Under the pieces are notes generated by a model, which saw only the letters and a list, made by a program, of their open reading frames with translations, made no database searches and was not told the origin of the DNA. From Octopus sinensis (taxonomy: Eukaryota), in the NCBI RefSeq assembly GCF_006345805.1, contig NC_043000.1, positions 162,936,001-163,000,000 on the forward strand: 64,000 bases of DNA, in the 5' to 3' direction. Every line of letters begins with the position of its first letter. The first letter of the stretch is position 1. Below are positions 6,298-64,000 of this stretch, piece after piece. The position numbers were made by a program, and so were the translations under genes.

Positions 6298-6329
<32 letters not shown>

Positions 6330-6330
<1 letters not shown>

Positions 6331-7225
6331 TTTTTTTTCTTCTTTCAAATTTGCTTCCATTTCTTGCCGAGTGTCTTCCCGACTCCTAGGGCAAAAAACT
6401 CATAGTATACATTGGTAGGCCATTAAACCAAACTCAGTAGTTCGTTCATTTTTTTTTTTTTTAAGTTAAATTAAAATACAGGAGCAGCAACAGTTCTCAC
6501 ATCGACAATGCTCTTCTCAATACGTGTGATGTACCAGTTAAGACAATCTTTTGCACTTCTTGCAGGGATGGTAAGCCAGGGACATTCTCATATAATTTTC
6601 GGTTCCCTTCTTGATCATTCCTAGTGCTCCTACGATCACTGGTATTGTAACCGCCTTGAGATGCCACATTTTCTCAATTTCAATGAGTAGGTCTTTATAT
6701 TTTCTGAGCTTGTCAAACTCTTTCGCTGAGATATTATGATCACAGGGGATGCTCATGTCGATCAATAAGCAAACTTTATTGTTTTGGTCTTTCACAACAA
6801 TATCTGGTTTATTGGCCTTGATGGTTCGGTCTGTATGTACTGGAATGTCCCACAGAATGGTTACATTTTCTCCTTCAGTTACAGCCTCAGGGTGGTGATT
6901 ATACCACTTGTCGGCAGTTTTGATATTGTAATGCCGACTTATTAGCCAGTGGAGATATTGGCCAACTCTGTCATGTCTTAATTTATACTCCACTGGTGCT
7001 AAGACTTTACATCCAGAGATTAGGTGGTCCACTGTTTCAATCATGTCGTTGCAGAATCGGCATTTTGGGTCTGCTCCATTTTTCATCACATTGGCCTGGT
7101 AGTTCCGGGTTAATAGGCTTTGATCTTGAGCAGCCAGGATGAAACCTTCGCTCTCTGCGTTTAACCCTGAGCTCCGTAGCCACTGATGAGTTTGCTTCTG
7201 GTCAACATCAGCTTGTTTGCTGCGG
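6330..7225 (-). mobile_element. 5'-truncated second copy of the same R4/Dong element
   Basis: Near-identical to 777-1672 (ORF 6538-7089, CCHC plus RLE). Flanked by TTA arrays at 6273-6329 and 7226-7303. Confidence 0.92.
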
Positions 7226-7255
7226 ATTATTATTATTATTATATTATTATTATTA

Positions 7256-7304
<49 letters not shown>

Positions 7305-31879: not shown

Positions 31880-32490
31880 TACGAGGGTTGCTGAAAAGTT
31901 CTTTGTATTGCGAAAGGACAGAGCTTTTACCTTTGCTGGGGAGGTGGTACAACTATTGAGAAGATACGCAAAACATCATGATGGTATACAATATATCTTT
32001 TTCTTTTTTACAGATTTAACGCGTGGTGGCAGCTCCTACAGTGGATTTAGGTAAAATTGAAGCACGATAGGTCTAGAACTACTTCGATTGCATAATTCGA
32101 ACATTTGTATTAAAATTTAGTTAAATATATCTAACGATCCTGTTGAGATATTCTTATGCGTTTATATGTGAACATGCTTTTATGTATGTGACCGCGGAAG
32201 TTGGCCGACTTAACTGGGGTTCATCTGTGACCTCGAAATGACCAGTCCGAAACCTTAACGCCTAGATTTTCACTGTGGAATAAGCTGAGCAACCATCCTT
32301 CAAGACTTCATATCGTCATGGATTTCCGCCGCTCCTTTGCTTTGCAAAAAGAGGGAATTCACGGCGAGATGAAGTCTTTAAGGATGGCTGCCCATCTTAC
32401 TCTACAGTGAAAATCTGGATGTCAAGGTTTCGGACTAATCATTTCGAAGTCACAGATGAACCCCGTTCAAGACGGCCAACTTCCACAACC
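31880..32490 (+). mobile_element. Mariner remnant (TIR plus HTH fragment)
   Basis: tacgagggttgctgaaaagtt TIR-like start; GCPSYSTVKIWMSRFRTNHFEVTDEPRSRRP. Confidence 0.7.
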
Positions 32491-32492
32491 AT

Positions 32493-34916
<2,424 letters not shown>

Positions 34917-35726: not shown

Positions 35727-35808
35727 TATAAGAAACAAACAAATAGGACATTATTTACATTCGACGGATATTTGTCCTCATCTTGTGCTGTTAACACAAC
35801 GTTTCGGA

Positions 35809-35856
<48 letters not shown>

Positions 35857-36212
35857 CATCATCATCATTATTGTTCAGGTCATTGCTTGGATTCGAACTC
35901 GGAATCTTGGGGTTAGTAGCCTGCGCTCTTCACTACGCCACGGGCATAAGGCGTAGTGGTTAAGAGCGCAGGCTACTAAGCCCAAGATTCCGAGTTCGAT
36001 TCCAAGCAGTGACCTGAACAACAACAATAATAATAATAACAACATCGAAGAATACCTTAGGAATGAGAACCCAGGTTCGAAATTTCCCCAAAGCGCCTGA
36101 AGAGGGCTGGAGGGTATATCAGCCGAAAGGTTGTGTTAACAACAAGCAAGATGAGGACAAATATCCGTCGAATGTAAACAATGTAAATAATGTCCTATTT
36201 GTTTGTTTCTAT
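35727..36212. mobile_element. Head-to-head pair of tRNA-headed, hammerhead-tailed elements
   Basis: Plus copy: ggcgtagtggttaag (A box, 35950), gagttcgattcc (B box), (aac/aat)n, then CTGAAGA G GGCTG gagggtatat CAGCC GAAA gGTT gtgtt (36097-36137). The mirror copy ends at 35939 and has an internal deletion. Confidence 0.8.
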
Positions 36213-37244: not shown

Positions 37245-37460
37245 TCCTTTCTACTAGAGGCAGAAGGCCCGAAATTTTGTGGAGCAGGAGCTAGTCAATT
37301 ACTTTGACCCCAGTGTTCAACTGGCACCTTTTTCATCGACCTATACAGGATAAAAGGTAAAGCCGACCTCGACTGAACTTGAACTCAGAGCGTGAAAACG
37401 GATGAAATGCCACTAAGCATTTTATCCACGTGCTAACGATTCTAGCAGCTCGTAGCTTTT
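37245..37460 (-). mobile_element. Nin/Deu-type SINE
   Basis: aaagccgacctcgactgaacttgaactcagag, same family as 9598. Confidence 0.75.
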
Positions 37461-37724: not shown

Positions 37725-38134
37725 TTACGCAGCAGCTAACAAATAGGTTTCACCCTTTTCGACTGTAGCCAACGGTGGAATTTGATTGGGTTCTTTGATG
37801 CCTAACGATTGTCGTTCCTCGATGATGTGTAATTCTGTAGCATCTGAAAACATATCGACATCTTGTATATTTCGTGGGTACCGTAGATATTTGACTATCA
37901 GTGGAATCGTGATTCTTGCTCCCCAGATGAATATTATTACACAAAATACCAGACCAATGATCATACTGAGCGCCATTGTACTGTCCTTCCCTTTACTCAC
38001 ACTTGCAGTAGTGACATTGGTAACATTGCAGTATGGTATGCATAGAAGATCCTGTTTCTTCTCTTCTCTCAGGTGTAATCCACTTCTAGCTTCAACTGTA
38101 AACGTACCGCCGAAAAGGAAAGTTAAATACGTAT
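37725..38134 (-). CDS. Terminal coding exon of small single-pass membrane protein A (unknown family)
   Basis: Non-repetitive ORF: NVTNVT sequons, TM MALSMIIGLVFCVIIFIWGARITIPLIV, basic KYLRYPR, tail ending PPLATVEKGETYLLAAA*. Phase-1 acceptors tttcag| (38134) or tttacag| (38095). Paralogous to 53609. Confidence 0.75.
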
Positions 38135-38361
38135 CTGAAACGATTAATTTGCATATATATGTGAGTATGTGCAAGCGGTTAAATGTGTGTGTATTTATGT
38201 GTCAACGTGTATGTATATACATATGTGTATGTGAGTGTGTGTGTGTTTATAATACACACACACATATATGTATGTATATATAATAATATAAGTAATATAT
38301 AAAGATATGCATATGTACATACACATATGTACATACCTACATATATATGTATATATACATG

Positions 38362-38716
38362 CATATATGGGTACAGGACATCAAAAAAACGTTGAACACA
38401 ATGAGAAACGAAAACATAAAAATAAAAACATAGAAGCGAACTTTTTTTTCACACAACGATAAAACAGAGAAACAAGACATACAACACAAGGAATATTCCC
38501 CTTCTTCAGTTATCCCTGTTTCATCTACTCCGCGTTTCGAGATAAGGACAAGACGCGACTTCTTTGAAACAGTCCTTCCCGCAAAGCAAATTAAATAAAA
38601 TTTGCGGGAAGGATTGTTTCAACGGAGTCGCGTCTTGTCCTTACCTTCGAAAACGCGGGGTAGATGAAACAGGGATAACTGAAGAAGGGGAATATTCCTT
38701 GTTTTGTATATGTCTT
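38362..38716. mobile_element. PLE-type terminal repeat with about 225-bp inverted duplication (38481-38706)
   Basis: Arms acaaggaatattccccttcttcagttatccctgtttcatctac..ccttcccgcaaa and their reverse complement, with few mismatches. Confidence 0.7.
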
Positions 38717-39574
38717 GAATAATTAAGAATCACGTCTCTTGACACAGATGCTTTGAGAAACTTAGAAAGGGTTACTCTAAAATCTTTCTTGCAAGGGAGA
38801 TCATTCAACTATTTAGCTACCGCTACACAAAAAATGCATGCAATAGAAATGTCAAACTATGCGCAAGCTAAGGAAAAATTCCAGTCGATATACAAGTGTT
38901 CAAATTCAAATCATGCAAGTTTTTAGAAAGTCCACAGAAATTGAATACAACGATGAGAAATGACGGAAAGTTATGTATATACATGATATGTATATACATG
39001 ATATGTATATACATGATATGTATATACATGATATGTATATAGCAGACGCATACTGAAGGTGAAAACAGTAGCGCAAGGCATTGTGAAAGTACATGCTGGA
39101 CAATTCTTCTGAAAAAGTTTAGTACGCCGAGAAATTAAGTCTCGCAACTTTATATATGAAGAAAATGACAATATGACAAAAGCTGTAACGCTGAAAGTTA
39201 GCAATAACCTTGCTGTGGCAAAAGTTGAGCTGGTGTGAGGATGATCATGAGAAGCTGGACTTGCAGTGGTAAGCTATACACTGAACAAAGCAGGATGTTG
39301 AAATGAGCTGGTTACTGTACTTGCAGCGAAAAAGGATGTTGAAATATTAACAAATCTCGGATTTGAAACTTCCATTTGTAAACTGGTTGAAAATATTGTT
39401 TCAGGCTGAAATAAATTTTAGTAGCGTTGTTGACGGAGCAGAAAAAATGGTCTGCTGGTATCGTGAAGGAAGAAATGCTGTTTATTCAAAATGTCGATAG
39501 TCCCTTTCCCTTTACTCTAATCCAGTATTGAGTACACTCTTTTCGATAGTGGTTATTCCTGTTCTCGCCAATAG

Positions 39575-39636
<62 letters not shown>

Positions 39637-39817
39637 AGATGTATGCTTGTGTACATGTAGGTTACATCCATCCGTTCAGCCAGTCATACTGCCATGCGAG
39701 CATACATACATACATATATACATGCATACATACATACATATATACATGTATACATACATACGTACGTACATACATACATACATACATACATACATACATA
39801 CATACATACATACATAC

Positions 39818-40110
39818 ATGGTGGCTGCCCCCTCGTTATCGAGTATGGCCATTGCACGAAGCTTAATCAATGTTGTTATCGTGTAATGCCTGTGCAAGAA
39901 GATTTTTTTTAAGTGAGGAAAGGCTGTGCACTGAGTCAATCCCACTCACTAAGCAACAGCAGCCATAATCCGAAAAGAAGAACAAGTCAGCATCGTCGGT
40001 AACCACTGAGCCGCAGGTTTTATGTCGGAGTTATCCCAGTTACCTGAGTTCCCTTCGCCTAGAAGGATGCCCTAACAAAGGCTCGGAGTCCTTCACTCCC
40101 AATAGTTTAA
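39818..40110 (-). mobile_element. Second copy of the (ATGT)n-tailed retroposon
   Basis: Reverse complement of about 23570-23870; tail merges into (CATA)n at 39700-39817. Confidence 0.8.
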
Positions 40111-40869
40111 CCAATGGTTTAACATACATACATACATACATACATACGAATCACTATATTTTTTAAATGTTCAGCTGAACAACTTGCGTCATAAAACTTA
40201 AACAGCTCCCTCGTTTTTTCCCTCTAGCTTTTTTGAGACATCTTCAGTGATTTGCAGTTTGAGTAAGGGTAAATTTTAGCATGCAGACGAGAATTTACCT
40301 AACCCATGCATAAAATATCCCTAAGAATTATTCATAGCATTGAGTAAAACTATAAATATGTATCTAATGTATTTATTGATATAGCAGTACATACATCAAA
40401 AAAATATTTACTAAACAGCATTTCCCCACTCTATAATTCTTATTGTTACAAAAACTGATTGAGGATCAAAAGTATCTGTCTAGATTCACTTACAGCTGCT
40501 TCAAAAGCTGTTATTTTGTTTGTTGATTGAAATAATTACAAAAGAAAATAATTATATATAATTATTTTAAACTGTGTGAATGAGTAGGATTTGGCAGAGC
40601 GATGGCCACACAGAATTTGGTTACATCTCTACATTCCAAGTTAATCTTTTAATTTTGCATTCCATCCTTTCTGCGTCAATTACATTAACTAAATTTACAC
40701 CACCACCCTCCAACTATAGAGATTATGACTTAATATCAAAAACCATTATTATTAAAGTAGCATGGTAATTTTTTGAAATTTATGCTAGTTCCTATAAGTT
40801 GTCAAAAACCACGTCGGTTTTATTAATTATAGAGAATGGGGCTAATCACGGTCAATTAGAGACGACGAG

Positions 40870-41090
40870 TCAATTCTTAGATTCAAATTTGGCACAAGGC
40901 GAGGAATTTCGGGGAGAGTTAAGTCGATTACATTGACCCCAGTGTTCAACTGGTACTTATTTTATCGACTCCGAAAATATGAAAGGTAAGGTGACCTCGG
41001 CGGAATTCGAACTCAGAACGTAAAAACTGTGGAAATGCTGCTAAGCATTTTGCCCGGCATGCTAACGGTTCTGCCAGTTGGCCACCTAGA
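40870..41090 (-). mobile_element. Nin/Deu-type SINE
   Basis: gtgacctcggcggaattcgaactcagaac..tgctaacggttctgccag. Confidence 0.8.
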
Positions 41091-41915
41091 CGAGACACAT
41101 TGTTGATAACTGGATAACTTTGTAACTGCTTCCAAGTGTTCTCCATTGCGTGTGTTACGTCATAAAGCATAACAGAAAACATATTCAAAAAAGCAAAGAC
41201 AAAGATAAATGCACATCAGTAATTATTATGTAGAGGTTCACCTTTATATCTATCTGAATATGGTCTTCTCTATCGCATATGGCTTGTAGAAATATTTATT
41301 AAAGTAATGCATAGACGTTGGTTAAATCATCTGCAGTAAACATCTTTTTCGGCCTCCAGCCAGGTGAAAAAGCATACTCAGTGAAGTTTATGTCTTAACG
41401 AATCCCAATAGTATTTGAGAAATTCCATAAAAACACACCCAGAAAAGAAATAGCAACAAAAATGGTTTTGCAATAGAGAACTCATAAAAGGAAAGCCAGC
41501 GCCCATGGGTTTTTTCTTAAAGGTCTGTGAGAGGTTGAGGAAGAGTTAAAGAAACCATGACTCATGGATTTAAATCTTCCAACAGACAGCCAACAGTGAT
41601 GCCTGCTGGGTTCAACTACTTCACATTGATAAGGGGCAAATACCCTGAAACTAGTCAGTGGATGTCTGAACCAGCATGGGAAAGCTGATGACCTTCCCTG
41701 ATCGAAGGTTGTAATGGTCACAGGTCTGTGTGTCATATAACTAGCTAGAGGCGATGACCTCTTGGAGCTATTCAACAGCAGCATTCGTCCTATTTTTCTG
41801 GACTGCCATGTTAGCTTGGTGATAACTATTAATATCCAGTACTGCTGCCGTAGTCTCCTTTAGAGGGATTTAAAAATAATATATATATAACATACATACT
41901 ATTATGACGTAGTTA

Positions 41916-43990
41916 CTCGTCGCCAATTGTTGTAGTATCGCCTCTATTTATGAGGATAATTATTTATACTATAACCGTGTAGTAACAATAAAACATATAA
42001 CGAAGCGGGGTAACAACAACGTAACAATCCAACAAACTCTCCACGAACTATACACAAACCAACAACCGATATTCCGACTAACTATCAAAATGACACCTTA
42101 AGACTTCCTGCAATTAACGCCTACTCCCTCTGCCTCTCACTCAGACCGCTACTATTTATAGTCATTCGGTCAAGTCTATTTTTGTTGGAGGTGTCGTGAC
42201 TCTCGCCACAACACCCCTCCTTTCGAGATTTCGACTTCCGTAGGAAACAAAATTTATTTTATTATTATTAGCTTCTTTTTCTTTCTTTCCAACACCTTTC
42301 CCTTTTTGAAATTTTGTTTCCCTGGGGAGTTCAGTACCTTTTCTGCTTAGGAATTATGTCTAAATGTTCAGTCTATTTACGTTTTTTGTGATTGCTCCTT
42401 CTAGGCTCAATCTCTTTCAGTGCTGGCACATCGAGCATGTCGTAAAACACTTCCATTGGAATTTCCTTCCTTTCTTCAGTATGTCTGATTTAAAATTTAT
42501 TTAAGTGTCGTTTTTACTCCCATCGCTGACCTTTTATTAAAAACATCAGGTTTGCAATTCTTTTAGCCACTATGCCATCTTGCCAACTCTCTTTACCGTT
42601 CTTGTATACTTTGAAATGGACTCTCTCTCTCCGACATAAAAATGTTTAGTTGAATGTTTTTGTATTTTCTCATTAGGTTTCTTTATTTTTTCTTTTTTTT
42701 TTTGCCTTTGGCAACAATTTGTCGAAGATCGATTTAATCTTTTGAGCGAACATTAGCTCTGCAGGTGACTTGCCTGAACTGGAATTCGGATTTGGCGTTA
42801 TTCTGTACCCCATTAAGAATATAGTTAGCGATTCGTCATTTCCCAACTCGTTCTTTGCTTTTTGTAGCGCTCGCTTGAAAGTATCTACGAATCGTTCTGC
42901 TTGCCCATTTCACCTCGGGGGTGGAAGGAGTGTGCAAACATGAGCTTGATGCATGCATTTTGCAGAATTTTTTGAACTCGTATCCTGTAAATTGTGTTCC
43001 ACTATCCGATACTATTGTGTCCGAAACAGCGTATCAAGTTCATGCAGGAACTTTATAGTTGCTTTTGAGGTAGGTTGACTGCACCTACATACTTCTGGCA
43101 ACGTGGTAAAGCTATCAACAATGATCAAGTAGTAGGCGCTATTCACTGGTCCAGCGTAGTCTATACGTACCCTGGGCCACGGACTATTGGTATTTCATCG
43201 GTGGTGCCTTGGCTGCTAGCGCACAACTTCTACATGATTTTACCAAATTTTCAATATCCCGGTCCATTGTCGGCCAATACACGTAACTCCTCACCAAAGC
43301 TTTCGTTCTTGACATCTCCGAGTGTTCGCTATGAAATTCATGTAATATCCGTTTCTGAAGAGCAGTTGCTACTACCACTCTTTGTTCGTACACTAATACA
43401 AAGTCGCAGAGTGAAACATGGTTCGCATTCATGTTTTTCTTAAATTTCTTTTTCAAGGTTTCCGTTGAGAAAACTTTAGAATTTTCTAAGCTCGACCTTC
43501 CTAACTTTGCTCTGCAATTTGAGCTCGTGTCCCACATTTTGGCAACTGTAACATTTTTGCGTTTTGAAAGGACAATCCTTCCTGAAACGCAGGGCTCCAT
43601 ATCCGTAGCATGGGTTTGGTCTTAACATTTTTTATACCTTCCCGGTATAAAGCTTGTTGAGAACTCCTCTTCGATTTTCTTTACGTCCTGACGGAAGTTT
43701 ACCACTCTTTGACACTCCTCTGCAACTGTCTTCAGGGTTAATTTTTGGTCCGTTTGTTCAAGTTTTGTGAGACTTCTTGCATGTATCTCCGCATCTTTGT
43801 TTTTCCATAAGCCTTTGTACAAAAATGAGGCATTTAAACATATCAGGTGTTAGTTCCTTCAATTTAAACCTTTCGCACATTCGATTTACGGTCCCGACAT
43901 AGTGGCAAAATCTTCATCCTCTTTTTTTAAACTAGATATCAACAATCCCATCGAGTGTTTAATAGGGAACTCTTATCACTGAATATTTTT
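41916..43990 (-). mobile_element. Internally deleted Gypsy element: gag fragment, integrase, PPT, LTR (41928-42213), PBS
   Basis: gag KDAEIHARSLTKLEQ..TVAEECQR joined to IN H2C2 (EFHSEH..YWPTMDRDIENLVKSCRSC) and rve (DYAGP..IVSDSGTQF..ERFVDTFKRAL). PPT aaaggagggg; LTR TGTTGT..ACAACA. Confidence 0.88.
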
Positions 43991-44125
43991 GATAGTAGTT
44001 CCACTGTTTGCTGGAAACAAATTTCACTAGTTTTTGCGGGGAAGTATGAAATAACAATATTTTTCATGTTCAGCGGCGCTAATTTACGTATTAATAGTTT
44101 TACTTTTTAGTTTCCGTTAGGTATG

Positions 44126-44421
44126 CTTCATAGGATTCCTTTCACGCTAGAAGGAACAGCTTGCGCAGTGGATTTGGAAAGTTATAGTGTATAGGCAAAA
44201 GGCACATGCTGGATTTGTCTCGTACTTATATGTTTAATCTAGGCGTACCTGTTGATGAAGACTTCACCTAGCACATTGTTTTATTTGCTAAAAAACGTCA
44301 GAAGCCATGGTCCAGGAAATAGATGGTAAATTTTTTTATTTTTCATTCCCTTTGAGTTTTTATCCCTAATAGTGGTTTGGAGTTTAGCTGTTCCTTCTAG
44401 CGTGAAAGAAATTCTATGAAG
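44126..44421. mobile_element. MITE with 36-bp TIRs next to (TA)n
   Basis: cttcataggattcctttcacgctagaaggaacagct / agctgttccttctagcgtgaaagaaattctatgaag, 2 mismatches. Confidence 0.75.
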
Positions 44422-44482
<61 letters not shown>

Positions 44483-45479
44483 ATTCATTAATTTTCTACT
44501 AGCCAGAATTACTTCTCTCTTCTTATTTAGATTTTTTCTTGTTCCACACAGAATTATATATAAAATGACATAAAATACGATAGGAAGAATGAAGTAGTAT
44601 TTGATGTGCTATCGCTAACTATGGACAGGGAAGATGAAGATGTTCGTCACGATGATATTACTCATCCTGAAATTGTGACGCTTTATTCCGTGCAGAAGAT
44701 CATGAAGAGTGAGACCTTGCAGAATTTTAACAAACTTTTGTGTTTGAAATATTTAAGATGCACCTTTTAATTGCAATTTCAAACTGAGTCAAATTTCTGC
44801 TCGATCCTTGATAATACTTCTTGCTATTGTCATTAATTTTATGTCTGTTTTATATTTAATGATTTTAAGCCACATTGAATTAAAATAAAAAATGCAACTT
44901 GTTCAGTAAACAATGCTATTTGTGCGGAGAATGACCTTGTGTTTCTACCTCTTTTATCAGTTCTGGTATTTAATCTTAAACGGCATTCAATACATTAAAA
45001 ATACAAATGCAGCACCGTGTGAGTTCAACAACGAATATAAATAATGTAATAGGTGAGTTGTAAAGTGAAAGACATCAAATAAACGACAGCCGAGTAGATG
45101 TCGGTTATGTATTCTTTATTAAGGTAAGTTAGTAATAATAAACAATAACGAGATGTAAATTTATTTTTCTAAGCATTTATAAGAGGTGCGGAGACGTATT
45201 CACAACCGTGTGTTTTCACATGTAAATTCAGTACTACTACAGTCCTCCACTGTGCTTTTCAGTTCGTCCAGAAATCGTTTGGGCTTTTGCTGCTACTAAT
45301 ACACTATTTTAAATTCTTTCCCCTCAAAAAGTAGTAACCATGTAATAGGCGACCCCATTAATTTAAGCTTAGAATGGCCTACAAATGCGACTTTAACGAG
45401 AGTATACACACACACACACACACACACATAAATATAATCGACACAATAAATATACCAATATATATGTATATATAAGGGA

Positions 45480-45619
45480 ACATATGTGACTGTGTGGTAG
45501 GAAGCTTGCTTCCTAACCACATTGTGCCTGGTTCAGTCCCGCTGCGTGGGCCAGTGTCTTCTACTATAGCCTCCGGCTAACCAAGGCCTTCTGATTTGGT
45601 AGACGGAAACTGAAACCCC

Positions 45620-45620
<1 letters not shown>
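45480..45620 (+). mobile_element. OK-like SINE 5' fragment
   Basis: gactgtgtggtaggaagcttgc..gtgtcttctactatagcc..tttggtagacggaaactgaaa. Confidence 0.75.
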
Positions 45621-45670
<50 letters not shown>

Positions 45671-45700
45671 ATGCATACATATATGTGTGTGTGTGCGTGC

Positions 45701-45741
<41 letters not shown>

Positions 45742-45870
45742 TGTGAGTTTGTATGTGTATTTCGTCAGTCGATAACTGATGAAGAATTGTGGACTTTGTG
45801 TCTCCCGTTCGTTTTTACATTCAGTATACGTTATTTCGTTTGTTTATTTACCATACATTATTTCATTTAT

Positions 45871-45920
<50 letters not shown>

Positions 45921-46582
45921 GGCACTCACAAACACATATATACGTACATACACACACATATAAATCGGAACGGGGGAGACGGATGCAGCAAGAGTATGAG
46001 AGCATAAGCAATATATCCTGTACAGAGTACATTGATTAATTTTCCTCAATCTCCGGTCGACGAATATTAGATACTCTGAAGTGATAACATGATAACAACA
46101 CACGCGCTGACATCACTTCAGCCTCCAGATGTAACTTCGAAGGATTAGAAACATCAACGATAAAAGAGATAAAAGTACAAAGCAGTTAGGATTTTAATAC
46201 TTTTAAAAATATTTAAAATATTTACGAATATATTTGAGTGTATATACCAGTGATGGGTAACTATCCGGAGAATTTATCAAAACGATTGTACAGTAGTTTA
46301 TTTAGTCCGGTCCAGGGGCCTAAATGTGTATGTGCCTGTATGTGTGTTTGTGGTGTGGTGGGAGGCATGTGAAGTGTTGAAGGGATGTTTGATGAAAAGG
46401 ATCGTTAAAACATGTAATCTGTCTTGTCATATTTACTATACTTAGCCTTCAATAAACAGAGGTTTATATACTGCGTACATGACAAACTAAGAGGGCCATA
46501 AACATCGAAAAGAAAATCTGGAACGTAGTGCCCGAGTTATGGCTGAATTTTAACGCCGAAAGTAGGAAAAGAATAGACTTAC

Positions 46583-46630
46583 TTGTAAAACCATAGCGAA
46601 TTGTATGAGATTGGTAAACCTCCATGTTGC
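46583..46630 (-). CDS. Candidate first coding exon of gene A (48 nt, MEVYQSHTIRYGFT, phase-1 donor)
   Basis: tttttacag|gcaacATGG..ACAA|gtaagt: good acceptor, Kozak context and donor; phase fits the terminal exon. No transcript evidence. Confidence 0.4.
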
Positions 46631-47844
46631 CTGTAAAAATTATTTGAATAGATAAAACTTTATGGAAAGTAATAAGTAACTAAATCATTCTAGTGTGTGA
46701 AATGTTTCTTTTGTTCGATACAAGGTCGAAATATACGCCGAAAACGAGACTAAAAGAGTGAGGCAGGTGTAAGGCGATAAGAAGTTTAGTGAGTATCAAA
46801 TAAATGCAACCATGCATGACAGCCGATTTCTGTGAAGCTCACGGGTCAGCTTTTTCCGTTTTGGCTTATGTTCATAAAGATGGCCAATGTTACGCACAAA
46901 GTTTATTGTGACGTCAAAGGTTTGTCCATATATATAAGTGGATCAATTTCATACATTTTACCTGTTATTTGCTTCGACTATCAAATAAGAATGCACGACA
47001 CGCAGAGATTGGTTAAGGACAAGCTTCTATGAACAAACAGCGTTAATGATGTCACAAATGAATTCGATCGTAGGAAGTGGGTTGAGAAGAAACTATAGCT
47101 TGTTTTTCTACGTTCGGTTGGGTATTGTGATTTGACAAACAGATTATATCCTCGTAAACAATTTCAGCTTTCTTGTAACCTTTTATATTCAAAAATTTCT
47201 CGTGTGTTGCTATTTCAGTAACATTAGATGACATTTAATTTTTCTACCCATAATTCCGTGGTGTTTTCATATTGTTTATGTCTATTGTTAGAATTGGTAG
47301 ACCAGTGATAATTTATTTCAGTAAAATCTAGTTTGGAATTTTATTTTATTTTATTTATCTGTTTTTATTGAAATACTGAAGAAGTATATATGTTGTGCTC
47401 TGAAATAGAATAGACATAGGTTTCAAGCAGGGCTCATCGTTTTCTCTGATACACTTTCTAGTCGCAAACCTCAAAATATTTTAAATAGCTATACGGAAAC
47501 TTAATCTTCTTCCGCTTTGTTATTATTTTCAATGACATTGTCTTTCATACAAGCAGGGTCAATATCATGACTATGAAACTAGATTCTTTTGCTGATTAAA
47601 TCGACAATACTCATGTACTGATGTAAGACACCCTTATTTGCAAATTAATGACGATAGAGGTGTTGCTGACTTTTGATTTATTTTGGTTTCTCCTTTTTGG
47701 TTCAGTAATCGATGGAATATTATAGTAATATCCTGAGGTAGGAGTAAATTACTCAAACAGTAATAAAAAGACATCTGCAATGAAGAGACATTGTTGATAT
47801 TCAATGCACAAAGTGGTATATTAGATGACAATATTGTTTTCAAA

Positions 47845-48030
47845 TTTTGGCACACGGCCAGAAATTTCGGAAGTCGATCACATCGACCCCAGTGGTACTT
47901 ATTTCATCGGCCCCCGAAAGTATGAAAGGCAAAGTTGATCTCGACGGAATTTGAACTCAGAACGTAAAGTCGGAGAAATTCTGTTCAACATATTATCCTG
48001 AATGGTACCGTGTCTGCCAGCTCGCCGCCT
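47845..48030 (-). mobile_element. Nin/Deu-type SINE
   Basis: ggcaaagttgatctcgacggaatttgaactcagaac. Confidence 0.75.
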
Positions 48031-49489
48031 TACCTGGGTACACAATATTAGTGCCGAATCTCAGGTTCTGCTTCACTTATAAATACTGATATTATTGTTA
48101 TTAAGAGAAGGGCAATTTTAGAAATAATACAGGAATGCAATGAATTTCTTATATGAAGAAATATTTTTATATTTATGTGTGCCTTTCAACCCTCCAAAAT
48201 TCGTAAAACAAATACTAGTAATAAAATAGTGGTCACTATAATCGGTTATACGTGTCACTTTCGATAATTAATGTGTCTAATTAAGAAATTAGATTTATTT
48301 CGCATTTATTTGATATTTAGCTTAAGCAAACTTAAGCACATTCTTTTTGTCTGAAAAAATGAAGAGAATCGCAATTAGTTGAATTGAGATGTCTGCAATT
48401 CATATTAGTCTCCGTTTTTATATGAACAGTTGATTCCGCTAAGCTGAGATTCAGTTTTAAACCATACGGCAGTGGCAGTGTGCTAAGACTAACATCACTT
48501 TGAAAACTTTGTTTATAAGCTGTGTTGAATCCAAGCCTACCTCTGTCAGCATTGATCAAATGATAAAAAGTCAAGTGAGTGTATCAGATAGATTGTTTAT
48601 AGGTCGATAAAATAAATACCACAAATGTACTGGAAATCCACTAAATCGACTCCATACATTGCATAAAATTATTACTGTCTCTAAAGTAATATTACCGTAG
48701 AGCAATAGATAAAACCTGAGGTAGACGAAACTGTCATGCAGTACCAATGTCCGAAGGAAAATGAAGATACTAATGCTCATAAGAAAAATTATTAACTTGA
48801 TAATTTCCCTTCCTCTAATGACACAGGGCTGTCTTGTCTTGTCAACAATAACCATTTATTATTACGACTAAAAAGAAGGAAGAAATTTAATGGATAATGG
48901 TGATTCTTTATTACCCACTAGGGGCGACCATCTGCAACAGCTTCACCAGTGTAATGCTAATGAAATTATTCATTCATATAGCTGTACTTTAATCAACACA
49001 CATCTAACTCAGAGGAGATTTCGAGGAAAATGCGTGTGAGAGTGGGATTGAAGGGATCCATTTAGAGTTAAGTACTATGATATCTCTATTTCTAAATATG
49101 TTGCTCTAATTCATTGTATAATAAAGATTTTGAAGCTTATGGGTGGGTTGCACAAAGCTTGAGAACGAAGATGTGTGATCTTACAATACATTTTACCCTT
49201 ATGTGTATGCAATGTTTAATCTGTAACTGTAATTGTAAATTGGACCTTGAGCAAAATAATTTGTCGACTTGAAACTGGATTGTATATGGGACTGGTTTGC
49301 GAGGCCTAAATACAGGCTTTAATCAGGTTTTAGCGACAAACTTGCTCTGTATAACTTACAACGCCCCAATGAACCTTTGAAAACGGATGAATATATTTCT
49401 TTCAGTAAATTAGTAAAAGAGTGGGATGTTGCAACTTGGAATTAACTGTTCATAGACTCACTCGAAGTGTTTGAATTTAAGCAAACACT

Positions 49490-51334
49490 TTACTACTTAC
49501 TACGGTTTACTACTTAAGTCTAGTGTAGTGTTCCAATCTAAACCCAGTAAATCTAAGTCATATCGATTTGTCAAAAAGCAAGCCCTGTTAAAAGTATTTG
49601 AATCGAACTGTACTTTACACTCTGATCATACCAATAAGTTTTAAACCTGATGCGTTCTTAAAAACGTGTTCTGTCTCAACAATGTGGGAAACCAAGTTGC
49701 TTCCAAGTTTTGCGAGAAATCAATGTGATATGAAATGCAATTTAACCTGGAGGATCATTTATTTAAACAATTAAATACTTGTGGTATTTTTGAAAATCCA
49801 TTTTAAAACTGGTATAAATCGTAGCAACTTGATTTCTTGAATTCTTGATTTGTAACAGCCGAAAACTTGAGACGAGACATTTTGCTTACCTCCTCTGAAA
49901 GCCAATACTTTCCATATGACCGAACTTACTGCATTATTGACAATTGTGTTGCTTGCGAGGGAAAAACTTTACATAATGTCTAGCACCGCAAACCAACATA
50001 GCTGGAAATGAGCGGGATTTCTTTTCTATCAATAGGTAATAGCTTGGAATCAGTTTTCACTTGATTTACTGACACTAAACTTGATAATTAGTCACTCGTT
50101 TCAATCATCTTCGTGCCGTACTTCAAGTATATTGACTTTTGGTACTCTTTTCTGGCTTGCTGTACAGTCATTTCTGGTCGTAGTATTAATTGTGATAACA
50201 GTTTACTAATGTCTGCATACGATGGTGATTGTAGACCAGCAACGAAGATTAAATGTTTAAACTGTTAAAGAATTCAAATTAAAACTTTTACATTTGTGAA
50301 CTGCTATAGCAGACAAAATCACTCTCCCCAGACTTGGGAATTTTTTAATTTAAAACAACCGTGGTGTTTTATACATTATTTATATTATTTACATTCAACG
50401 GATATTTGTCCTCATCTTGTTTGTTGTTAACACAACATTTCGGCTGATATGCCCTCCAGCCTTCTTCAGGTGTCTTGGGGAAATTTCGAACCTAGGTTCT
50501 CATTTTTCGATGTTGTTGTTGTTCAGGTCACTGCTTGGAATCGAACTCGGAGTCTTGGGCTTAGTAGTCCACGCTCTAAACCACTACGCCATATGCCGAA
50601 ACGGTGTATTAACAACAAACGAGGACAAATATTCGTCGAATGTAAATAATGTAAATAATGCACATAATTCCTCATCTCTTAAATATAGAACTGCGGTGTC
50701 TTACGTGAAACAAAGATGAATTTGCACCAAAAATCTTCTGAAGTATTTCAACTCTCTCATTGAAAGGGATGCCTCGAAGATTCTTCGGTAGTTTACAGCT
50801 GTTTATTAGTTCAAAGTGTGTTTATTAGTTCAAAGCTTAGTTAATAGTAATCCTTAATATTCCAGCACCCAACGCTAAAAGTATCTCCAAAATGTGCAAA
50901 CCATGAATCAAAGGTAATATCAGCGACTGGAATTTGAAGCTGTCTGAGCTTCGTCACTGTTTGAATTGATAGTTAACTTTGAGGTTAGTCATTCAATAAT
51001 TTTAAACTGTGTTTTTGCTGACCTTGGAGAAGCGCTTCCATTTGTTCAAAAAGGATAGCTATTTTATCATCCCATCCTCGTCGATATTGTTGTAACTATG
51101 ACTGCAATCATAATTTGAGCCACGAGTACTAGACGATAAAAAATATGACCCATTAGACACCAGCGAAGAAGAAATAACTCGTTTTATATAATAACAATCG
51201 ACAACACAAAGTGTCTGTCAGACAAGAAACTCGGGCGAAAGCAGACACGTGGAAGGGAGACCGACTGCAAAGACGCGACCGGTTGAACGCCATAGTCACA
51301 TGCTGAAAATCTGTTAGTCGTCTTATCCCTAACA
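49490..51334 (-). mobile_element. Gypsy 5' half: LTR (51088-51334), degenerate PBS, gag, protease; interrupted at 50385-50700
   Basis: LTR TGTTA..CAACA then tatcgacgagg. gag TFDSWFAHF..ILQKIFGANSSLF..AGLQSPSYAD, zinc-knuckle remnant, protease ITLISRKTWKQLG..KNASG..LDLLGLDW. Confidence 0.78.
50385..50700 (-). mobile_element. tRNA-headed hammerhead-tailed element with inverted partial tail at its 5' side
   Basis: Head 50590-50520; hammerhead gacac CTGAAGA A GGCTG gagggcatat CAGCC GAAA tGTT gtgtt at 50474-50429; plus-strand partial tail 50594-50692. Possible degenerate TSD ggtgt(t/c)tta. Confidence 0.82.
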
Positions 51335-51366
<32 letters not shown>

Positions 51367-53608
51367 GTGTATGTGTGTGCACGTGCGTGCGAATGCGTGT
51401 GAAGGCGTGTAACCGAATGACTATGGTGTAGCGCACGCGATCATACGGTCTTGGGTTTGATTACTGAACCGGTCGAGCATTTTGTCCTTGAGCTGAGTAC
51501 TTTATTTCATTTTTAGGCTGGTCTAGGCAATGTACCTCAAAATAAGTACGATTCAGGTGCTGTTGCAGCTCTCACTCTTTCTAGTTGTCACATGTTTGAT
51601 AATGAAGAATGTGATGGTTGTAAGAGTGGCTGTATTTGTTCGTGACTAAAGCAGTTAACGAAAGCCTTGTTCATGCTACCATACAGGCTTCAGAGTGATA
51701 ACTATGAATTTCTTTTTATATGTATATTCGGCAAGTGGTACGTTATTTGACAGGTAAAATGGAGTGTTATTTACTCTGTCAAGTTAAAACCTTTAGGTGG
51801 TCTTAAGCTTTAGACAAATAGAGTTTGATAAAATAAATACTAAATTACCGGGTCTATAACATCAATTAACTTCAAGAAAAATTTATTTTACCACAAAGTT
51901 AAAATATTGTAAGTACAACAAAATATAATACGAAGGGATAATTCCACTGTGCACCATCCTTCCCATTCAGTTTTATGCTAAAATAATTTTTTGACTCAAC
52001 CAAAAAGTCAAGACAATTTTTTTCTTTGCAAGTGTATGTATTTTGCACTATTAACTCAAAGCTACTCATACCAGAATCTATGGTTTCGATACACGTAAAT
52101 CTACTTCCATTACGTTTTCTCTGTACACGATGTTATTGTTATCCTACAATTCGTAGCTCGCTCAGTAAACATTTAAATAATATAACAAATTTACAAGTTT
52201 CGAAAAACACAAATTCCTTTTGGTTTTATTTTTTGATATGTTGCTTAGTAATTATCGGTAAAATATTTGGATATCCTACCTTCAATATTTTGTGAAACAT
52301 CAGCATCGATACTCAGACAAGTAAAACAATAAGACAATATAGAAACTGGACAATATCTGAGTTATATAATTTTCTTGTAAAAATATATATATATAGATAT
52401 ATGTATAAAACTATAATACAAAGAAAGTATTCAGGGTTGGTGTCAGCAAAACAGTCAATCAAATTCGTAATATTTATATTAAATGTCATTTAATGAGTTC
52501 TGCATACAATCAAGAGAAGAGAATTGTAACATTTTTGGAAGAGGCCTTCTCCTGAGAAATAAAAAAAATTACGGAACGTGTATAAAATTATATTCTTACA
52601 TCACAGACAGGGTTCTTTCTCGTGGGGTGGGTTTAGGAAATGAAGCACATACGGTGCATTTAAATGTACAACTATTTAACACTTTTCCAAAGGAAGGCTC
52701 TACCTGTAATGTTAGAATCCACTTTTCATTATATGACATGAATTTATTTAATATTAAGAATTTTAATATTTATTTGGTAAATTGAATGTTACAATATAGA
52801 GTAATCAGGTGATTTAACGCATCATTTGTCAGATGAACGTTTAAGTTGCATGAATGTTCTTGATGAAATCTGACTGATTTCGAGATGGAACCAATAAAAC
52901 CTTAACCCTCATGAGAGGCTTTGAACACAGCACAAGTTAATTAGATGCTCATCGACTTTTACAGTTCTGTAGTGCTTACTGCACTAAACCATTTTATATT
53001 GCGGTATCTTCAGAAAACCATTGACATACTATGATGTCGGTGAGAAGATACCGACAATTTACAATTTTCACTTAGTCACCTGACACCCTTGTACATTCAA
53101 CAAGTGTTTTCAGTTTCCTAAATATACTAAAGTCAGGTTCCTCCGCAGGCCTGGATTAAACAACGCGGAGCTGACCAAGTAATGAACCTCAAATATTTTG
53201 AACAGTTTTGGCATTTTAGCTATAACCGATTAGGTTTGAGTGTTATATTTGGTATGCAACAGTCGATCACCCGTTGAAGTCAGCCCTCTCTTTGGTATTG
53301 ACCGCTAGATGAATGCCTTCCACAATGAGGTCTTTATGAATATGGGTTAACATTAGAACTAGAATTAGAGTGTTAGTTAAGGTTAAGTCTAAGAATATTG
53401 TAAACCCGTAAAATTAGTCTTTTCATAACTTATATATAAAGTTTAAAAATTTGGCTTTTGCAGTGTCAATTCGTATTCTCTCATTTCCTTTTGAATTGTG
53501 GCACCATGGTCAGCAAAAGTAAATTTGGCAGCTGTTTATTGCTGATTGACCCGTAGTGCTATTGTTTAAATTTGTTTCGTTTTCCTCTTTCAGTAAAGCA
53601 TTGTTTTT

Positions 53609-53916
53609 TCAAGCTGCTGCCAAGTAGTACTTTTCCCCATTTTCTACTGTCTCCAAAGTCGGTTTCGATATAATGGAAATACTGAATGATGGTATAACTA
53701 CAGGAACTGAGTTGATATCGTGATTAGGTTCAGCAGGTGGCGAAGATGATTGTTTCCTGTGACGATGGAACATGAAACATTTACATAAAAGTACTAAAAT
53801 GATTAGCAATAAAAATCCTCCAAGGGCAAAAGAGAATTCTATTGTTTCTACATTCATTTTTGTGGTTACGCTTGGTGGTAGCCACCAACCATCGAATGGT
53901 ATTTCATTATTCTCCG
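53609..53916 (-). CDS. Terminal coding exon of small single-pass membrane protein B (paralog of A)
   Basis: ttttatttgcag| phase-1 acceptor; ENNEIPFDGWWLPPSVTTKMNVETIE, TM FSFALGGFLLLIILVLLCKCFMF, basic HRHRK, tail ending PTLETVENGEKYYLAAA*. Confidence 0.78.
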
Positions 53917-54071: not shown

Positions 54072-54280
54072 CAGTTCTATATTTAAGAGATGAGGAATTT
54101 TGTACATTATTTACATTTGATGGATATTTGCCTTCATCTTCTTTGCTGTTAACACAACGCTTCGGTTGATATACGTTCCAGCCTTCATCGGGTGTCTTGG
54201 GGAAATTTCGAACCTGGGTTCTCATTTCTAAGATATTTTTCGATGTTATTATCATTATTATTATTATTATTATTATTATA
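54072..54280 (-). mobile_element. Headless copy of the hammerhead module (degenerate core)
   Basis: gacacCCGATGAAggctg..caaccGAAGcgttgtgtt plus the shared tail attcctcatctcttaaatatagaac. Confidence 0.75.
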
Positions 54281-59959: not shown

Positions 59960-60140
59960 AATGTGGTTAAGTCGAATACACCGATCCAAGTACTTGTGAT
60001 CGACTGTTATTTATTTTATCGACCCAGCGGGATGAAATGCAAGATTGACCGCGGTGAAATTTGAACTCAGAACGTGATGACAGACGAAATGCCACTAAGT
60101 ATTTTGCCCGGCTTGTTAACGGTTCTGCTAGTTCACCACC
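59960..60140 (-). mobile_element. Nin/Deu-type SINE
   Basis: ttatcgacccagcgggatgaaatgc..gaaatttgaactcagaac. Confidence 0.75.
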
Positions 60141-60372
60141 TGGAGTTGCTTTGAATATTACAAGCTTCAATGCGCTAAAAACAGTTTACCTGAATATGCA
60201 CTGCAGAAATTGAGAAGTGTCTAATACACCCGTACGTCTTTCATGTTAGATATGACCTGGACCGTTCCTAACATTACCAAAACCTATCCAAGTTATAGAT
60301 TGTCGTGTTAAATCCATCTTCATAGAGCAAACCTTAAATTGACAAGTGTGTTGCTACTAGTGTATATCTTAC

Positions 60373-60534
60373 CTTCACCTCATTAACTGAATCGGGCAAT
60401 AAATCTTTAAAATCTGTAATATTTAAAGCTAACTGCCCTTAACTCTAAAAGCTCCCTACGCCTATCAGTTGCCCATACATTCTCCTTCCTACTTTTGTGT
60501 TGATAAACAAGATTAAGTAACACTCACCATCCAT
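60373..60534 (-). CDS. Candidate 5' exons of gene B: ATG GAT G (60534-60528) and a 41-nt exon (60413-60373), separated by a 114-nt intron
   Basis: aagATGGATG|gtgagt; aatattacag|..GTGAAG|gtaaga; open frame MDDFKDLLPDSVNEVK. No transcript evidence. Confidence 0.35.
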
Positions 60535-61034
60535 CTTATGTATAATTTCAAACAAACGCTTAAGATTATCAACTTTTCTCTGATAAATACTGAACTACAG
60601 TTATTTTGTTGTTAGTAAGGTTATTTCTGTTGTTGTGGTTGTTGTTTTGTTTTTAACTTCTTACTCGCTTGTTTCTTGGTGTATCTTTCTACCTCGTGAT
60701 TTTTCTGTTCAAACGCACATGATCTAAGAACAAAAATAAGGAAAAGAAAAATAAATAAGAAAGCAGACCAAAAGGTATATACATTTATAAAAAAATAAAG
60801 GTAAGCAGTCTGATCTGTATTGATAAGCACACTTTGATTTCATCTACTTTCTCATCTTAAAACGAGTGGTGTTTAAAGTCTTGGAAATAAAACCCTTCTC
60901 AATGTATAGTTATAAATGAGAGCAAAACAATGAAATGATGCAAGGTTACAAATCAACACTAGACATGTATTTATCACAATATACTAGATCGAAAAAGCAC
61001 AACTGTGCTGAGAGAAAAGTTAGGCATAAGAAGA

Positions 61035-63839: not shown

Positions 63840-64000
63840 TTCGATGGAAAACTAACAGATTCTTTGGCTCGCCGGTCAAAGTGCTTAGCGGCATTCCGTC
63901 CGTCTTTGCGTTCTGAATCCACATTCTGTCGCAGTCGACTCTGCATTTCATCCTTTTTGGGGTCGATAGAATAAGTACCAGTTGAACACTGGGGTTGATG
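63840..64000 (+). mobile_element. Nin/Deu-type SINE running off the window end
   Basis: gtcgactctgcatttcatcctttttggggtcgatagaataagtaccag. Confidence 0.75.

What the first reader, a model, noticed from the sequence alone, without database searches (positions are those of the whole stretch)
37725..53916. Tandem pair of small orphan single-pass membrane proteins sharing only a C-terminal PxLxTVExGExYxLAAA motif
Seen: two minus-strand exons about 16 kb apart, each with a phase-1 acceptor, a short N-terminal segment, one TM helix, basic residues after the TM and a roughly 50-aa tail. Their last 17 residues match at 12 positions (PPLATVEKGETYLLAAA vs PTLETVENGEKYYLAAA), while the rest is unalignable by eye. 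The AAA codons differ synonymously (gct gct gcg vs gca gca gct), which suggests selection on the protein. Inference: N-out/C-in topology (NVT sequons in A, positive-inside rule). B has juxtamembrane CKC, like palmitoylated transmembrane adaptors. I do not recognise the family; it may be a lineage-specific receptor/adaptor cluster whose terminal motif docks a shared partner.
Basis: partly seen in the sequence, partly recalled or inferred. Interest (0 to 1): 0.8.

Follow-up and report, generated by a model that had tools for sequence, protein, structure and literature searches.

The report
Octopus tandem pair of small membrane proteins
Two neighbouring octopus genes encode small single-pass membrane proteins that share only a conserved 17-residue C-terminal motif; both look like real coding genes found only in octopuses, and their function is untested.

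Summary
The window is Octopus sinensis chromosome DNA. On the minus strand, two terminal exons end in PPLATVEKGETYLLAAA* (37778-37725) and PTLETVENGEKYYLAAA* (53662-53609).

Each exon belongs to a two-coding-exon gene. Each has a phase-1 intron, a consensus donor and acceptor, and a strong Kozak ATG. A is 150 aa (RefSeq LOC115210799) and B is 104 aa (O. bimaculoides A0A0L8HK16).

Both genes lie in the same order in O. bimaculoides. Outside the motif, A and B are no more alike than shuffled sequences. Inside it, 12 of 17 residues are identical, and 8 of those 12 use different codons (pS 0.8, saturated). This points to an old duplication with selection on the peptide.

The coding exons have no indels between species, although the flanks carry 12 gap openings per kb. 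Only the sense frame stays open in every species.

A profile search of 1.84 billion protein representatives found only these two clusters. Pfam, NCBIfam and PDB sequences gave nothing. AlphaFold is confident only about the TM helix, and the tails look disordered.

Best reading: octopod-restricted bitopic membrane proteins whose free C-terminal linear motif docks a shared cytosolic partner. Expression and function could not be tested. Interest is modest.

The parts
46583..46625 (-). Gene A, first coding exon: ATG plus 14 codons plus 1 base (MEVYQSHTIRYGFT), ending in phase 1. Donor GTAAGT at 46582-46577. Kozak context GGCAACATGG.
   Evidence: tblastn of P0001/P0002. Sequence and splice sites. 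Conserved in O. bimaculoides and O. vulgaris.
37725..38134 (-). Gene A, terminal coding exon (residues 15-150 plus TAA), entered after the TTTCAG acceptor.
   Evidence: The spliced translation equals RefSeq LOC115210799 (P0001) exactly. Orthologues have no indels.
38088..38132 (-). Gene A: weakly hydrophobic N-terminal segment TYLTFLFGGTFTVEA. It may be a signal peptide with a VEA cleavage site.
   Evidence: Read from the sequence. Conserved in three species. Short low-confidence helix 16-22 in AlphaFold. No signal-peptide predictor was available.
38010..38042 (-). Gene A ectodomain core CIPYCNVTNVT: two conserved Cys (CxxxC) and two N-glycosylation sequons.
   Evidence: The sequons are kept as NITNVT and NITNIT in the other two species.
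37917..37976 (-). Gene A transmembrane helix MALSMIIGLVFCVIIFIWGA.
   Evidence: KD19 of 2.62. AlphaFold helix 66-98 with pLDDT about 84. dN/dS 0.13-0.19.
37728..37778 (-). Gene A C-terminal motif PPLATVEKGETYLLAAA.
   Evidence: No nonsynonymous change between O. sinensis and O. bimaculoides, against 4 synonymous changes.
60528..60534 (-). Gene B, first coding exon under the 104-aa model: ATGGATG (M, D, plus 1 base), phase 1. Donor GTGAGT at 60527-60522. Kozak context CATAAGATGG.
   Evidence: Matches the start of O. bimaculoides A0A0L8HK16 (P0005).
53609..53916 (-). Gene B, terminal coding exon (residues 3-104 plus TGA), entered after the TTGCAG acceptor.
   Evidence: 99% identical to O. vulgaris P0004 and 81% to O. 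bimaculoides P0005, with no indels.
53777..53836 (-). Gene B transmembrane helix with juxtamembrane Cys-Lys-Cys: FSFALGGFLLLIILVLLCKC.
   Evidence: KD19 of 2.65. AlphaFold helix 17-59 with pLDDT about 90. CKC is kept in O. bimaculoides.
53612..53662 (-). Gene B C-terminal motif PTLETVENGEKYYLAAA.
   Evidence: One change (K to E) at a variable position in O. bimaculoides.

Best explanation
These are two real protein-coding paralogues that arose by an old tandem duplication. As far as the databases show, they are restricted to octopods. Each encodes a small bitopic membrane protein with the N-terminus outside and the C-terminus in the cytosol.

Each protein has four parts:
- a short, fast-changing ectodomain (in A, glycosylated and holding a CxxxC pair);
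- one transmembrane helix;
- a basic juxtamembrane stretch (in B with a CKC that could be palmitoylated);
- an intrinsically disordered cytoplasmic tail.

The only element the two proteins share is the last 17 residues, P-x-L-x-T-V-E-x-G-E-x-Y-x-L-A-A-A-COOH. I read it as a short linear motif presented at the free C-terminus. On this reading it docks one cytosolic partner common to both proteins. The acidic-flanked Tyr could serve as a phosphorylation switch. The divergent ectodomains and TM segments would give each paralogue its own context.

Shown: the gene structures, the synteny, the constraint on the reading frames, purifying selection on the motif, a single confident helix, and the lack of relatives. 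Inferred: topology, palmitoylation, docking, phosphorylation and the identity of the partner.
For: Gene models: spliced translations reproduce the database proteins, with GTAAGT/GTGAGT donors, polypyrimidine-AG acceptors, phase 1 in both genes and A(-3)/G(+4) Kozak ATGs.

Synteny: the same order and strand occur in O. bimaculoides CM046604.1.

Frame constraint:
- The syntenic alignment has 12.1 gap openings per kb, but the CDS has none. The probability of that is 0.007 for A, 0.024 for B and 0.0002 jointly.
- Indels reappear directly after the B stop codon.
- The sense frame is the only frame open in all species.

Motif selection:
- Between paralogues, 8 of the 12 identical residues use different codons. 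pS is 0.8 (saturated) and dN is 0.21.
- Between orthologues there is 1 nonsynonymous change where 6.1 are expected at the flank rate (P = 0.015).
- The A transmembrane helix has dN/dS of 0.13-0.19.

Disorder: AlphaFold gives pLDDT of 84-90 only for the TM helix and below about 55 for the tails, motif included.

Topology: sequons are conserved, and the residues after the TM carry a net positive charge.

Not a repeat and not a known family: only two clusters among 1.84 billion representatives, and no Pfam, NCBIfam or PDB sequence hit. There are no further copies in the window or in the syntenic locus.
Against: - No expression, splicing or protein evidence could be obtained here.
- Annotation is inconsistent between assemblies.
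- Overall dN/dS is high: 0.56-0.96 for A and 1.09 for B. For B only the motif shows constraint, and on very few changes.
- The coding exons change about as fast as the flanks.
- The motif fits no canonical class that I could check by sequence. PDZ classes I-III fail because p-2 is Ala. YxxPhi, ITIM, ITAM and dileucine motifs also fail.
- Paralogy rests on 17 residues plus architecture, because the rest is unalignable.
- A signal peptide in A is only weakly suggested.
Confidence: 0.55

Rival explanations
1. The shared C-terminus is a sorting or turnover signal rather than an adaptor-docking site. It could direct ER export, endocytosis or lysosomal targeting. It could also be a C-terminal degron resembling the alanine tails read by Pirh2 and CRL2-KLHDC10.
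For: The motif sits at the extreme free C-terminus of a disordered cytosolic tail and ends in three Ala. Ala-ending C-degrons that need the free carboxylate are documented (PMC10591846).
Against: [quoted passage not shown] Three Ala lower KLHDC10 binding about 400-fold and make Pirh2 binding undetectable. Leu at -4 abolishes Pirh2 binding and weakens KLHDC10 binding about 70-fold. Both octopus proteins end in L-A-A-A. There is no YxxPhi motif (Y-L-L-A and Y-Y-L-A), no [DE]xxxL[LI] and no KKxx. Conservation spans 17 residues, more than such signals usually need.
Confidence: 0.2
2. The two ORFs are only the terminal exons of larger receptor genes. The exons for their extracellular domains lie further upstream, and the short annotated first exons are prediction artefacts.
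For: Both exons are entered in phase 1, which is typical of domain-encoding exons. An acceptor-like site lies directly before the A ATG. The O. vulgaris model of B extends 19.6 kb upstream with extra exons.
Against: Both ATGs have strong Kozak context and consensus donors conserved across species. The only sizeable minus-strand ORFs between the genes are retrotransposon remnants or low-complexity sequence. The extra 70 residues of the O. vulgaris model are basic, match no family and lack a signal peptide, as expected of a longest-ORF call through a 5' UTR. The O. bimaculoides model starts at MD.
Confidence: 0.1
3. One or both ORFs are not functional genes. They could be decaying duplicates or chance ORFs picked up by gene predictors, and the motif is a relic.
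For: dN/dS is about 1 for B and 0.56-0.96 for A. The substitution rate equals that of the flanks. Annotation is patchy. No transcript contig was found. Escaping a stop by chance is not rare (probability 0.21 for A and 0.40 for B).
Against: No indels occur in 720 coding bases where 8.7 gap openings are expected (P = 0.0002). The motif is kept although synonymous sites between the paralogues are saturated. The A transmembrane helix is constrained and the sequons are conserved. Only the sense frame is open in three species.
Confidence: 0.08
4. The proteins are single-pass auxiliary subunits of a channel, transporter or receptor. They would act mainly through the TM and juxtamembrane helix, as KCNE or FXYD proteins do. 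The C-terminal motif would be secondary.
For: In A the most conserved block is the TM plus the juxtamembrane stretch IIFIWGARITIPLIVKYLRYPRNIQDVD (dN/dS 0.13-0.5). AlphaFold extends that helix to residue 98. Size and topology fit.
Against: The TM and juxtamembrane segments are not shared between A and B. In B they are not conserved (dN/dS 1.3). Only the terminal motif unites the pair. There are no Pfam hits to KCNE or FXYD models, and the FXYD motif is absent.
Confidence: 0.07

Closest known systems
Transmembrane adaptor proteins of vertebrate leukocytes (LAT, NTAL/LAB, PAG, LIME)
   Same: Very short ectodomain, one TM helix and juxtamembrane cysteines (CKC in B). The cytoplasmic tail is disordered and carries docking motifs that include tyrosine.
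   Different: No sequence relationship. A lacks the juxtamembrane Cys pair. There is only one conserved Tyr, in a motif that is not YxN, YxxL or YxxV. The conserved element is the extreme C-terminus.
Small type I/III glycoproteins with a conserved extreme C-terminal scaffold-binding motif (syndecans EFYA, glycophorin C and SMAGP EYFI, neurexins EYYV)
   Same: Small size, a glycosylated short ectodomain (A) and a single TM. Conservation is concentrated in an acidic-aromatic motif at the free C-terminus. Family members diverge elsewhere.
   Different: The end is Y-x-L-A-A-A, so the aromatic residue sits at -6 and p-2 is Ala. It therefore fits no canonical PDZ class. No Pfam Syndecan or related hit. 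This comparison rests on my knowledge of those families.
Single-pass auxiliary subunits (KCNE, FXYD)
   Same: About 100-150 aa, N-out without (B) or with a weak (A) signal peptide, N-glycosylated, and with a conserved TM/juxtamembrane helix in A.
   Different: No family signature and no Pfam hit. The TM is not conserved between the two paralogues.
Alanine-tail C-degrons read by Pirh2 and CRL2-KLHDC10 (PMC10591846)
   Same: The extreme C-terminus ends in consecutive alanines and lies in an accessible cytosolic tail.
   Different: Only three Ala, with Leu at -4. In the published peptide assays that combination gives little or no binding.

Membership tests
Taxonomically restricted (orphan) gene family | No detectable homologue outside the clade | tested here: met
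   A profile of TM plus tail against 1.84 billion representatives found only the A and B clusters at E <= 0.001. Word-index searches found only Octopus sequences and one unidentified octopod read set. Limit: a relative sharing only a diverged motif would score below threshold, and no cephalopod genome could be scanned directly.
Taxonomically restricted (orphan) gene family | Evidence that the ORF is maintained as coding | tested here: met
   Zero indels against 8.7 expected (P = 0.0002). The motif is under purifying selection. Only the sense frame is open in every species.
Taxonomically restricted (orphan) gene family | Transcription and translation | not testable with these tools
   No RNA-seq, Iso-Seq or proteome data could be queried. 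The models come from NCBI, JGI and CNAG annotation pipelines.
Transmembrane adaptor proteins (LAT/NTAL/PAG type) | Juxtamembrane CxxC-type palmitoylation motif | tested here: inconclusive
   B has a conserved C-K-C at the cytosolic end of the TM. A has only one Cys, inside the TM. Acylation is untested.
Transmembrane adaptor proteins (LAT/NTAL/PAG type) | Several tyrosine-based SH2 docking motifs in a long tail, and sequence similarity to family models | tested here: not met
   The two proteins share one conserved Tyr. The tails are 57-63 aa. No Pfam hit at E <= 10 beyond noise.
PDZ-ligand C-termini (classes I-III) | [ST]-x-Phi, Phi-x-Phi or [DE]-x-Phi at the C-terminus | tested here: not met
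   Both proteins end in A-A-A with Leu at -4, so p-2 is Ala. The class definitions are from my knowledge of ELM.
Tyrosine or dileucine sorting signals; ITIM, ITAM, hemITAM | YxxPhi, [DE]xxxL[LI], [ILV]xYxx[ILV], YxxL/I | tested here: not met
   The motif reads Y-L-L-A or Y-Y-L-A, preceded by G-E-T or G-E-K. No pattern is satisfied in both proteins.
Ala-tail C-degron (Pirh2 / CRL2-KLHDC10) | [quoted passage not shown] | tested here: not met
   The end is L-A-A-A-COOH. The requirements are from PMC10591846. Octopus E3 specificity is untested.
KCNE / FXYD auxiliary subunits; syndecans | Match to the family profile (Pfam) or signature motif | tested here: not met
   None of the five proteins hit such a family at E <= 10. 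No FXYD motif is present.
Dispersed repeat or transposon-derived ORF | Many copies in the genome, with DNA-level similarity extending into the flanks | tested here: not met
   Two copies in the window and two in the syntenic locus. The motif is 67% identical at nucleotide level and the flanks are at about the random level of 25-28%. Only two protein clusters exist in the databases.

The most novel reading that the evidence does not exclude
The 17-residue ending (P-x-L-x-T-V-E-x-G-E-x-Y-x-L-A-A-A-COOH) could be a previously undescribed class of C-terminal recognition motif. It would be read by a cytosolic domain in octopods, and so define a cephalopod-specific membrane-adaptor module. The fast-evolving ectodomains would sense different cues (N:S changes of 17:3 in A, above the neutral flank rate). 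Both proteins would feed one conserved intracellular partner, possibly gated by phosphorylation of the single conserved Tyr.
Probability: 0.15. Interest if true: 0.55.

Novelty: new variant of a known kind. Interest (0 to 1): 0.3.

Why it matters
Cephalopod genomes hold many lineage-restricted genes of unknown function. Few of them offer a concrete handle for experiments. This pair does: two proteins that have otherwise diverged completely keep one terminal peptide, which can be used directly as bait to find its partner.

If the partner is a conserved signalling or trafficking protein, the pair would show how a new membrane adaptor family is built around a short linear motif. If nothing binds, the pair remains one more example of small, fast-evolving orphan membrane proteins. 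The practical result now is a corrected joint annotation, since each public annotation misses one of the two genes.

Tried and rejected
1. Shared upstream exons or a segmental duplication. blastn and tblastx between the two gene regions found only SINE-like and microsatellite repeats.
2. Further copies of the motif. An HMM and regular expressions on six frames of the window and the O. bimaculoides locus found none.
3. Wider homologues.
- The profile search of 1.84 billion representatives found only the two clusters.
- The tail-profile word search had 1 candidate and no hit.
4. Known families. Pfam, NCBIfam and PDB sequences gave nothing above noise.
5. Transcript evidence. The Logan contig holding the third A orthologue is genomic, because it is collinear through the intron. 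P0005 is not on record.
6. Literature. No paper in the held library names the loci or the SRA runs.
7. A folded tail domain. AlphaFold gave only low-confidence coil, or a weak helix, for the motif, so no fold search was run.
8. The Ala-tail degron reading. It is disfavoured by the published length and -4 requirements.
9. The antisense ORF over A exon 2 (165 aa, plus strand). It is interrupted in the third species.
10. Similarity of A and B outside the motif. There is none beyond shuffled controls.
11. Species of SRR11869390/1. It could not be identified.
Full report
**What is there**

The window is AT-rich animal DNA (37% G+C) full of microsatellites and transposon remnants. It is Octopus sinensis chromosome CM016862.1. 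The locus fetched for the RefSeq protein LOC115210799 is the exact reverse complement of window 27725-56625.

On the minus strand, two open frames end in PPLATVEKGETYLLAAA-TAA (motif 37778-37728) and PTLETVENGEKYYLAAA-TGA (motif 53662-53612).

**Gene models**

Searching the two exon peptides returned only octopus proteins.
- For A: O. sinensis LOC115210799 (150 aa, 100% identity), O. bimaculoides LOC106870194 (81%), and an ORF on a 1.2-kb contig assembled from SRA runs SRR11869390/1 (76%).
- For B: an O. vulgaris 'hypothetical predicted protein' (172 aa, 99%) and O. bimaculoides A0A0L8HK16 (104 aa, 81%).

Mapping these proteins back onto the window gives two genes with the same simple structure.
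- A has a coding exon at 46625-46583 (MEVYQSHTIRYGFT plus one base, donor GTAAGT). An 8.4-kb intron follows, then the terminal exon 38134-37725.
- B has a coding exon at 60534-60528 (ATGGATG, donor GTGAGT). A 6.6-kb intron follows, then the terminal exon 53916-53609.
- Both introns are phase 1. Both ATGs have A at -3 and G at +4. Spliced translations reproduce the database proteins exactly.

The O. vulgaris model of B adds 70 basic residues from 5' exons, which match no family. That annotation used TransDecoder on PASA transcript assemblies alongside ab initio predictors (PMC10700109). The extension therefore looks like a longest-ORF call through a 5' UTR. This is an inference. If right, it would hint that a spliced transcript exists.

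**Architecture**

Each protein has one strongly hydrophobic segment followed by basic residues. AlphaFold2, run with the five available sequences, is confident only about that helix. In A it is helix 66-98 with pLDDT about 84. In B it is helix 17-59 with pLDDT about 90. The ectodomains and tails, including the motif, stay below about 55. The tails are therefore most likely disordered, and the motif is a linear peptide rather than a domain.

A carries a weakly hydrophobic N-terminal stretch ending in VEA, which may be a signal peptide. It also has a conserved C-x-P-Y-C pair and two N-glycosylation sequons. The sequons persist as NVTNVT, NITNVT and NITNIT in three species, which fits a lumenal N-terminus. 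B has an acidic 29-residue N-terminus without a signal peptide, and a C-K-C at the cytosolic end of the helix that is kept in O. bimaculoides.

**Is the resemblance real, and what kind is it?**

Without the motif, A and B are no more similar than shuffled sequences. This holds for the ectodomain, the TM and the tail taken separately.

Within the motif, 12 of 17 residues are identical and 8 of those 12 use different codons. The proportion of synonymous differences is 0.8, which is saturated. dN is 0.21.

I compared all 3.04 million pairs of stop-terminated ORF ends in the window. Every other non-low-complexity pair with at least 12/17 identity has at least 80% nucleotide identity, as a DNA repeat would. 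The A-B pair has 67% nucleotide identity and unrelated flanks. A motif HMM scores the two copies, and the two in O. bimaculoides, at 38-41 bits. The next hit in six frames scores 4.4 bits.

The duplication is therefore old, and the peptide, not the DNA, has been retained. Same strand, adjacency, the same two-exon phase-1 structure and the same domain order all make paralogy the simplest account. It still rests on only 17 residues.

**Are the genes maintained?**

The O. bimaculoides locus is collinear with window 59259-27948 and holds both genes in the same order.

Across 18 kb of that alignment there are 8.0% mismatches and 12.1 gap openings per kb. The 411 and 309 coding bases have no gaps at all (P = 0.007 and 0.024; joint 0.0002). 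Insertions reappear immediately after the B stop codon. Only the sense frame is open in every species, and a 165-aa antisense ORF over A is broken in the third species.

Substitutions tell a mixed story.
- A overall has dN/dS of 0.56-0.96.
- The A transmembrane helix has 0.13-0.19, and the A motif 0-0.7.
- The A ectodomain is above 1, with nonsynonymous to synonymous changes of 17:3 against 10:11 in the rest (Fisher P = 0.02). Its dN is about twice the flank rate.
- B overall has dN/dS of 1.09, and only the motif is low (0.28).

Across both orthologue pairs, the motif shows one nonsynonymous change where 6.1 are expected at the flank rate (P = 0.015). Escaping a stop codon by chance is not rare (probability 0.21 and 0.40), so the argument rests on the indels and the motif.

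**How far does the family reach?**

A profile of TM plus tail from all five sequences was searched with HMMER against 1.84 billion representatives. It found two proteins at E <= 0.001, and they are the A and B cluster representatives. Pfam, NCBIfam and PDB sequences gave only noise. No paper in the held library mentions the loci.

The limits are real. A relative keeping only a diverged motif would fall below threshold. The word-index search cannot bridge even A to B, because they share no 5-mer. No cephalopod genome could be scanned directly.

Annotation is also patchy. B is not called in O. sinensis or in the NCBI O. bimaculoides v2 record. A is not called in the O. vulgaris stretch that holds its first exon.

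**Mechanism**

I commit to this reading: two octopod-restricted bitopic membrane proteins whose disordered cytosolic tails present a common C-terminal linear motif to one shared partner. The divergent ectodomains and TM segments would supply different contexts. The acidic residues before the single conserved Tyr (E-x-G-E-x-Y) make phosphorylation plausible.

None of this was tested. The motif fits none of the canonical classes I could check by sequence: PDZ I-III, YxxPhi, dileucine, ITIM and ITAM.

I also considered a genome-encoded alanine-tail degron. Published peptide data require at least four terminal Ala, and they show that Leu at -4 abolishes Pirh2 binding and weakens KLHDC10 binding about 70-fold (PMC10591846). 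L-A-A-A is therefore a poor candidate.

The other rivals are scored in their own sections. They are terminal exons of larger receptors, non-functional ORFs, and TM-driven auxiliary subunits.

**Verdict**

The genes already exist in databases as uncharacterised predictions. What is new is the link between them, the evidence of constraint and the defined motif. This is an undescribed small family of a familiar general kind. Interest is modest until expression and a binding partner are shown.

Noticed in passing
window 947-4645 (-) and 5600-7260: Pieces of a non-LTR retrotransposon. RVT_1 reverse transcriptase lies at 1972-2511 and 2725-3129, with a weak zf-RVT match at 947-1648. A second, nearly identical copy of its 3' part lies at 6541-7257, and the flanks are duplicated too (about 75-1650 against 5600-7260).
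   Followed up: partly
window 42676-43849 (-): Remnants of an LTR-retrotransposon integrase inside the intron of gene A (Integrase_H2C2, E = 3.5e-15, at 43187-43621). The region is broken into several ORFs.
   Followed up: partly
window about 32280-34750 (+): A direct repeat with an offset of about 1152 bp. Many ORF ends are identical between 32284-33450 and 33436-34605. It is too long for Tandem Repeats Finder (maximum period 500), which reported nothing.
   Followed up: partly
window 54072-54279, 50375-50693, 36017-36196, 35748-35814: Copies of a short SINE-like repeat, 83-96% identical, in both orientations. One sits just upstream of the B terminal exon. A second short repeat family recurs at 40920-41090, 37307-37423, 47893-47974, 59996-60141 and 63871-63995.
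   Followed up: no
window 37786-38280 (+): A 165-aa antisense ORF overlaps the terminal exon of gene A. It stays largely open in O. bimaculoides (116 aa) but is interrupted in the third octopod, so it is probably a by-product of the sense codon usage.
   Followed up: yes
window 60695-60724 and 60535-60591 (-); L004 10001-17310: The O. vulgaris model of gene B adds 70 N-terminal residues from 5' exons, some of which lie beyond the window. They are basic, match no family and are probably 5' UTR read as the longest ORF.
   Followed up: partly
window 46626-46640 (-): An acceptor-like site (TTTTTACAG|GCAAC) lies directly before the ATG of gene A and is conserved in O. bimaculoides and O. vulgaris. 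It suggests an upstream non-coding exon. It also leaves open the possibility that A and B share 5' exons or a promoter.
   Followed up: no
window 24753-25556 (-) and 17745-18503 (-): Two long ORFs (268 and 253 aa) with no Pfam match at E <= 0.01. The second is half proline-rich low complexity. Both are probably transposon-derived, but this was not established.
   Followed up: partly
L003 2836-2960 against window 53609-53490: The AATAAA 69 nt after the B stop in O. sinensis and O. vulgaris reads AATGAA in O. bimaculoides, where two short insertions also follow the stop. The B 3' end may differ between species.
   Followed up: no
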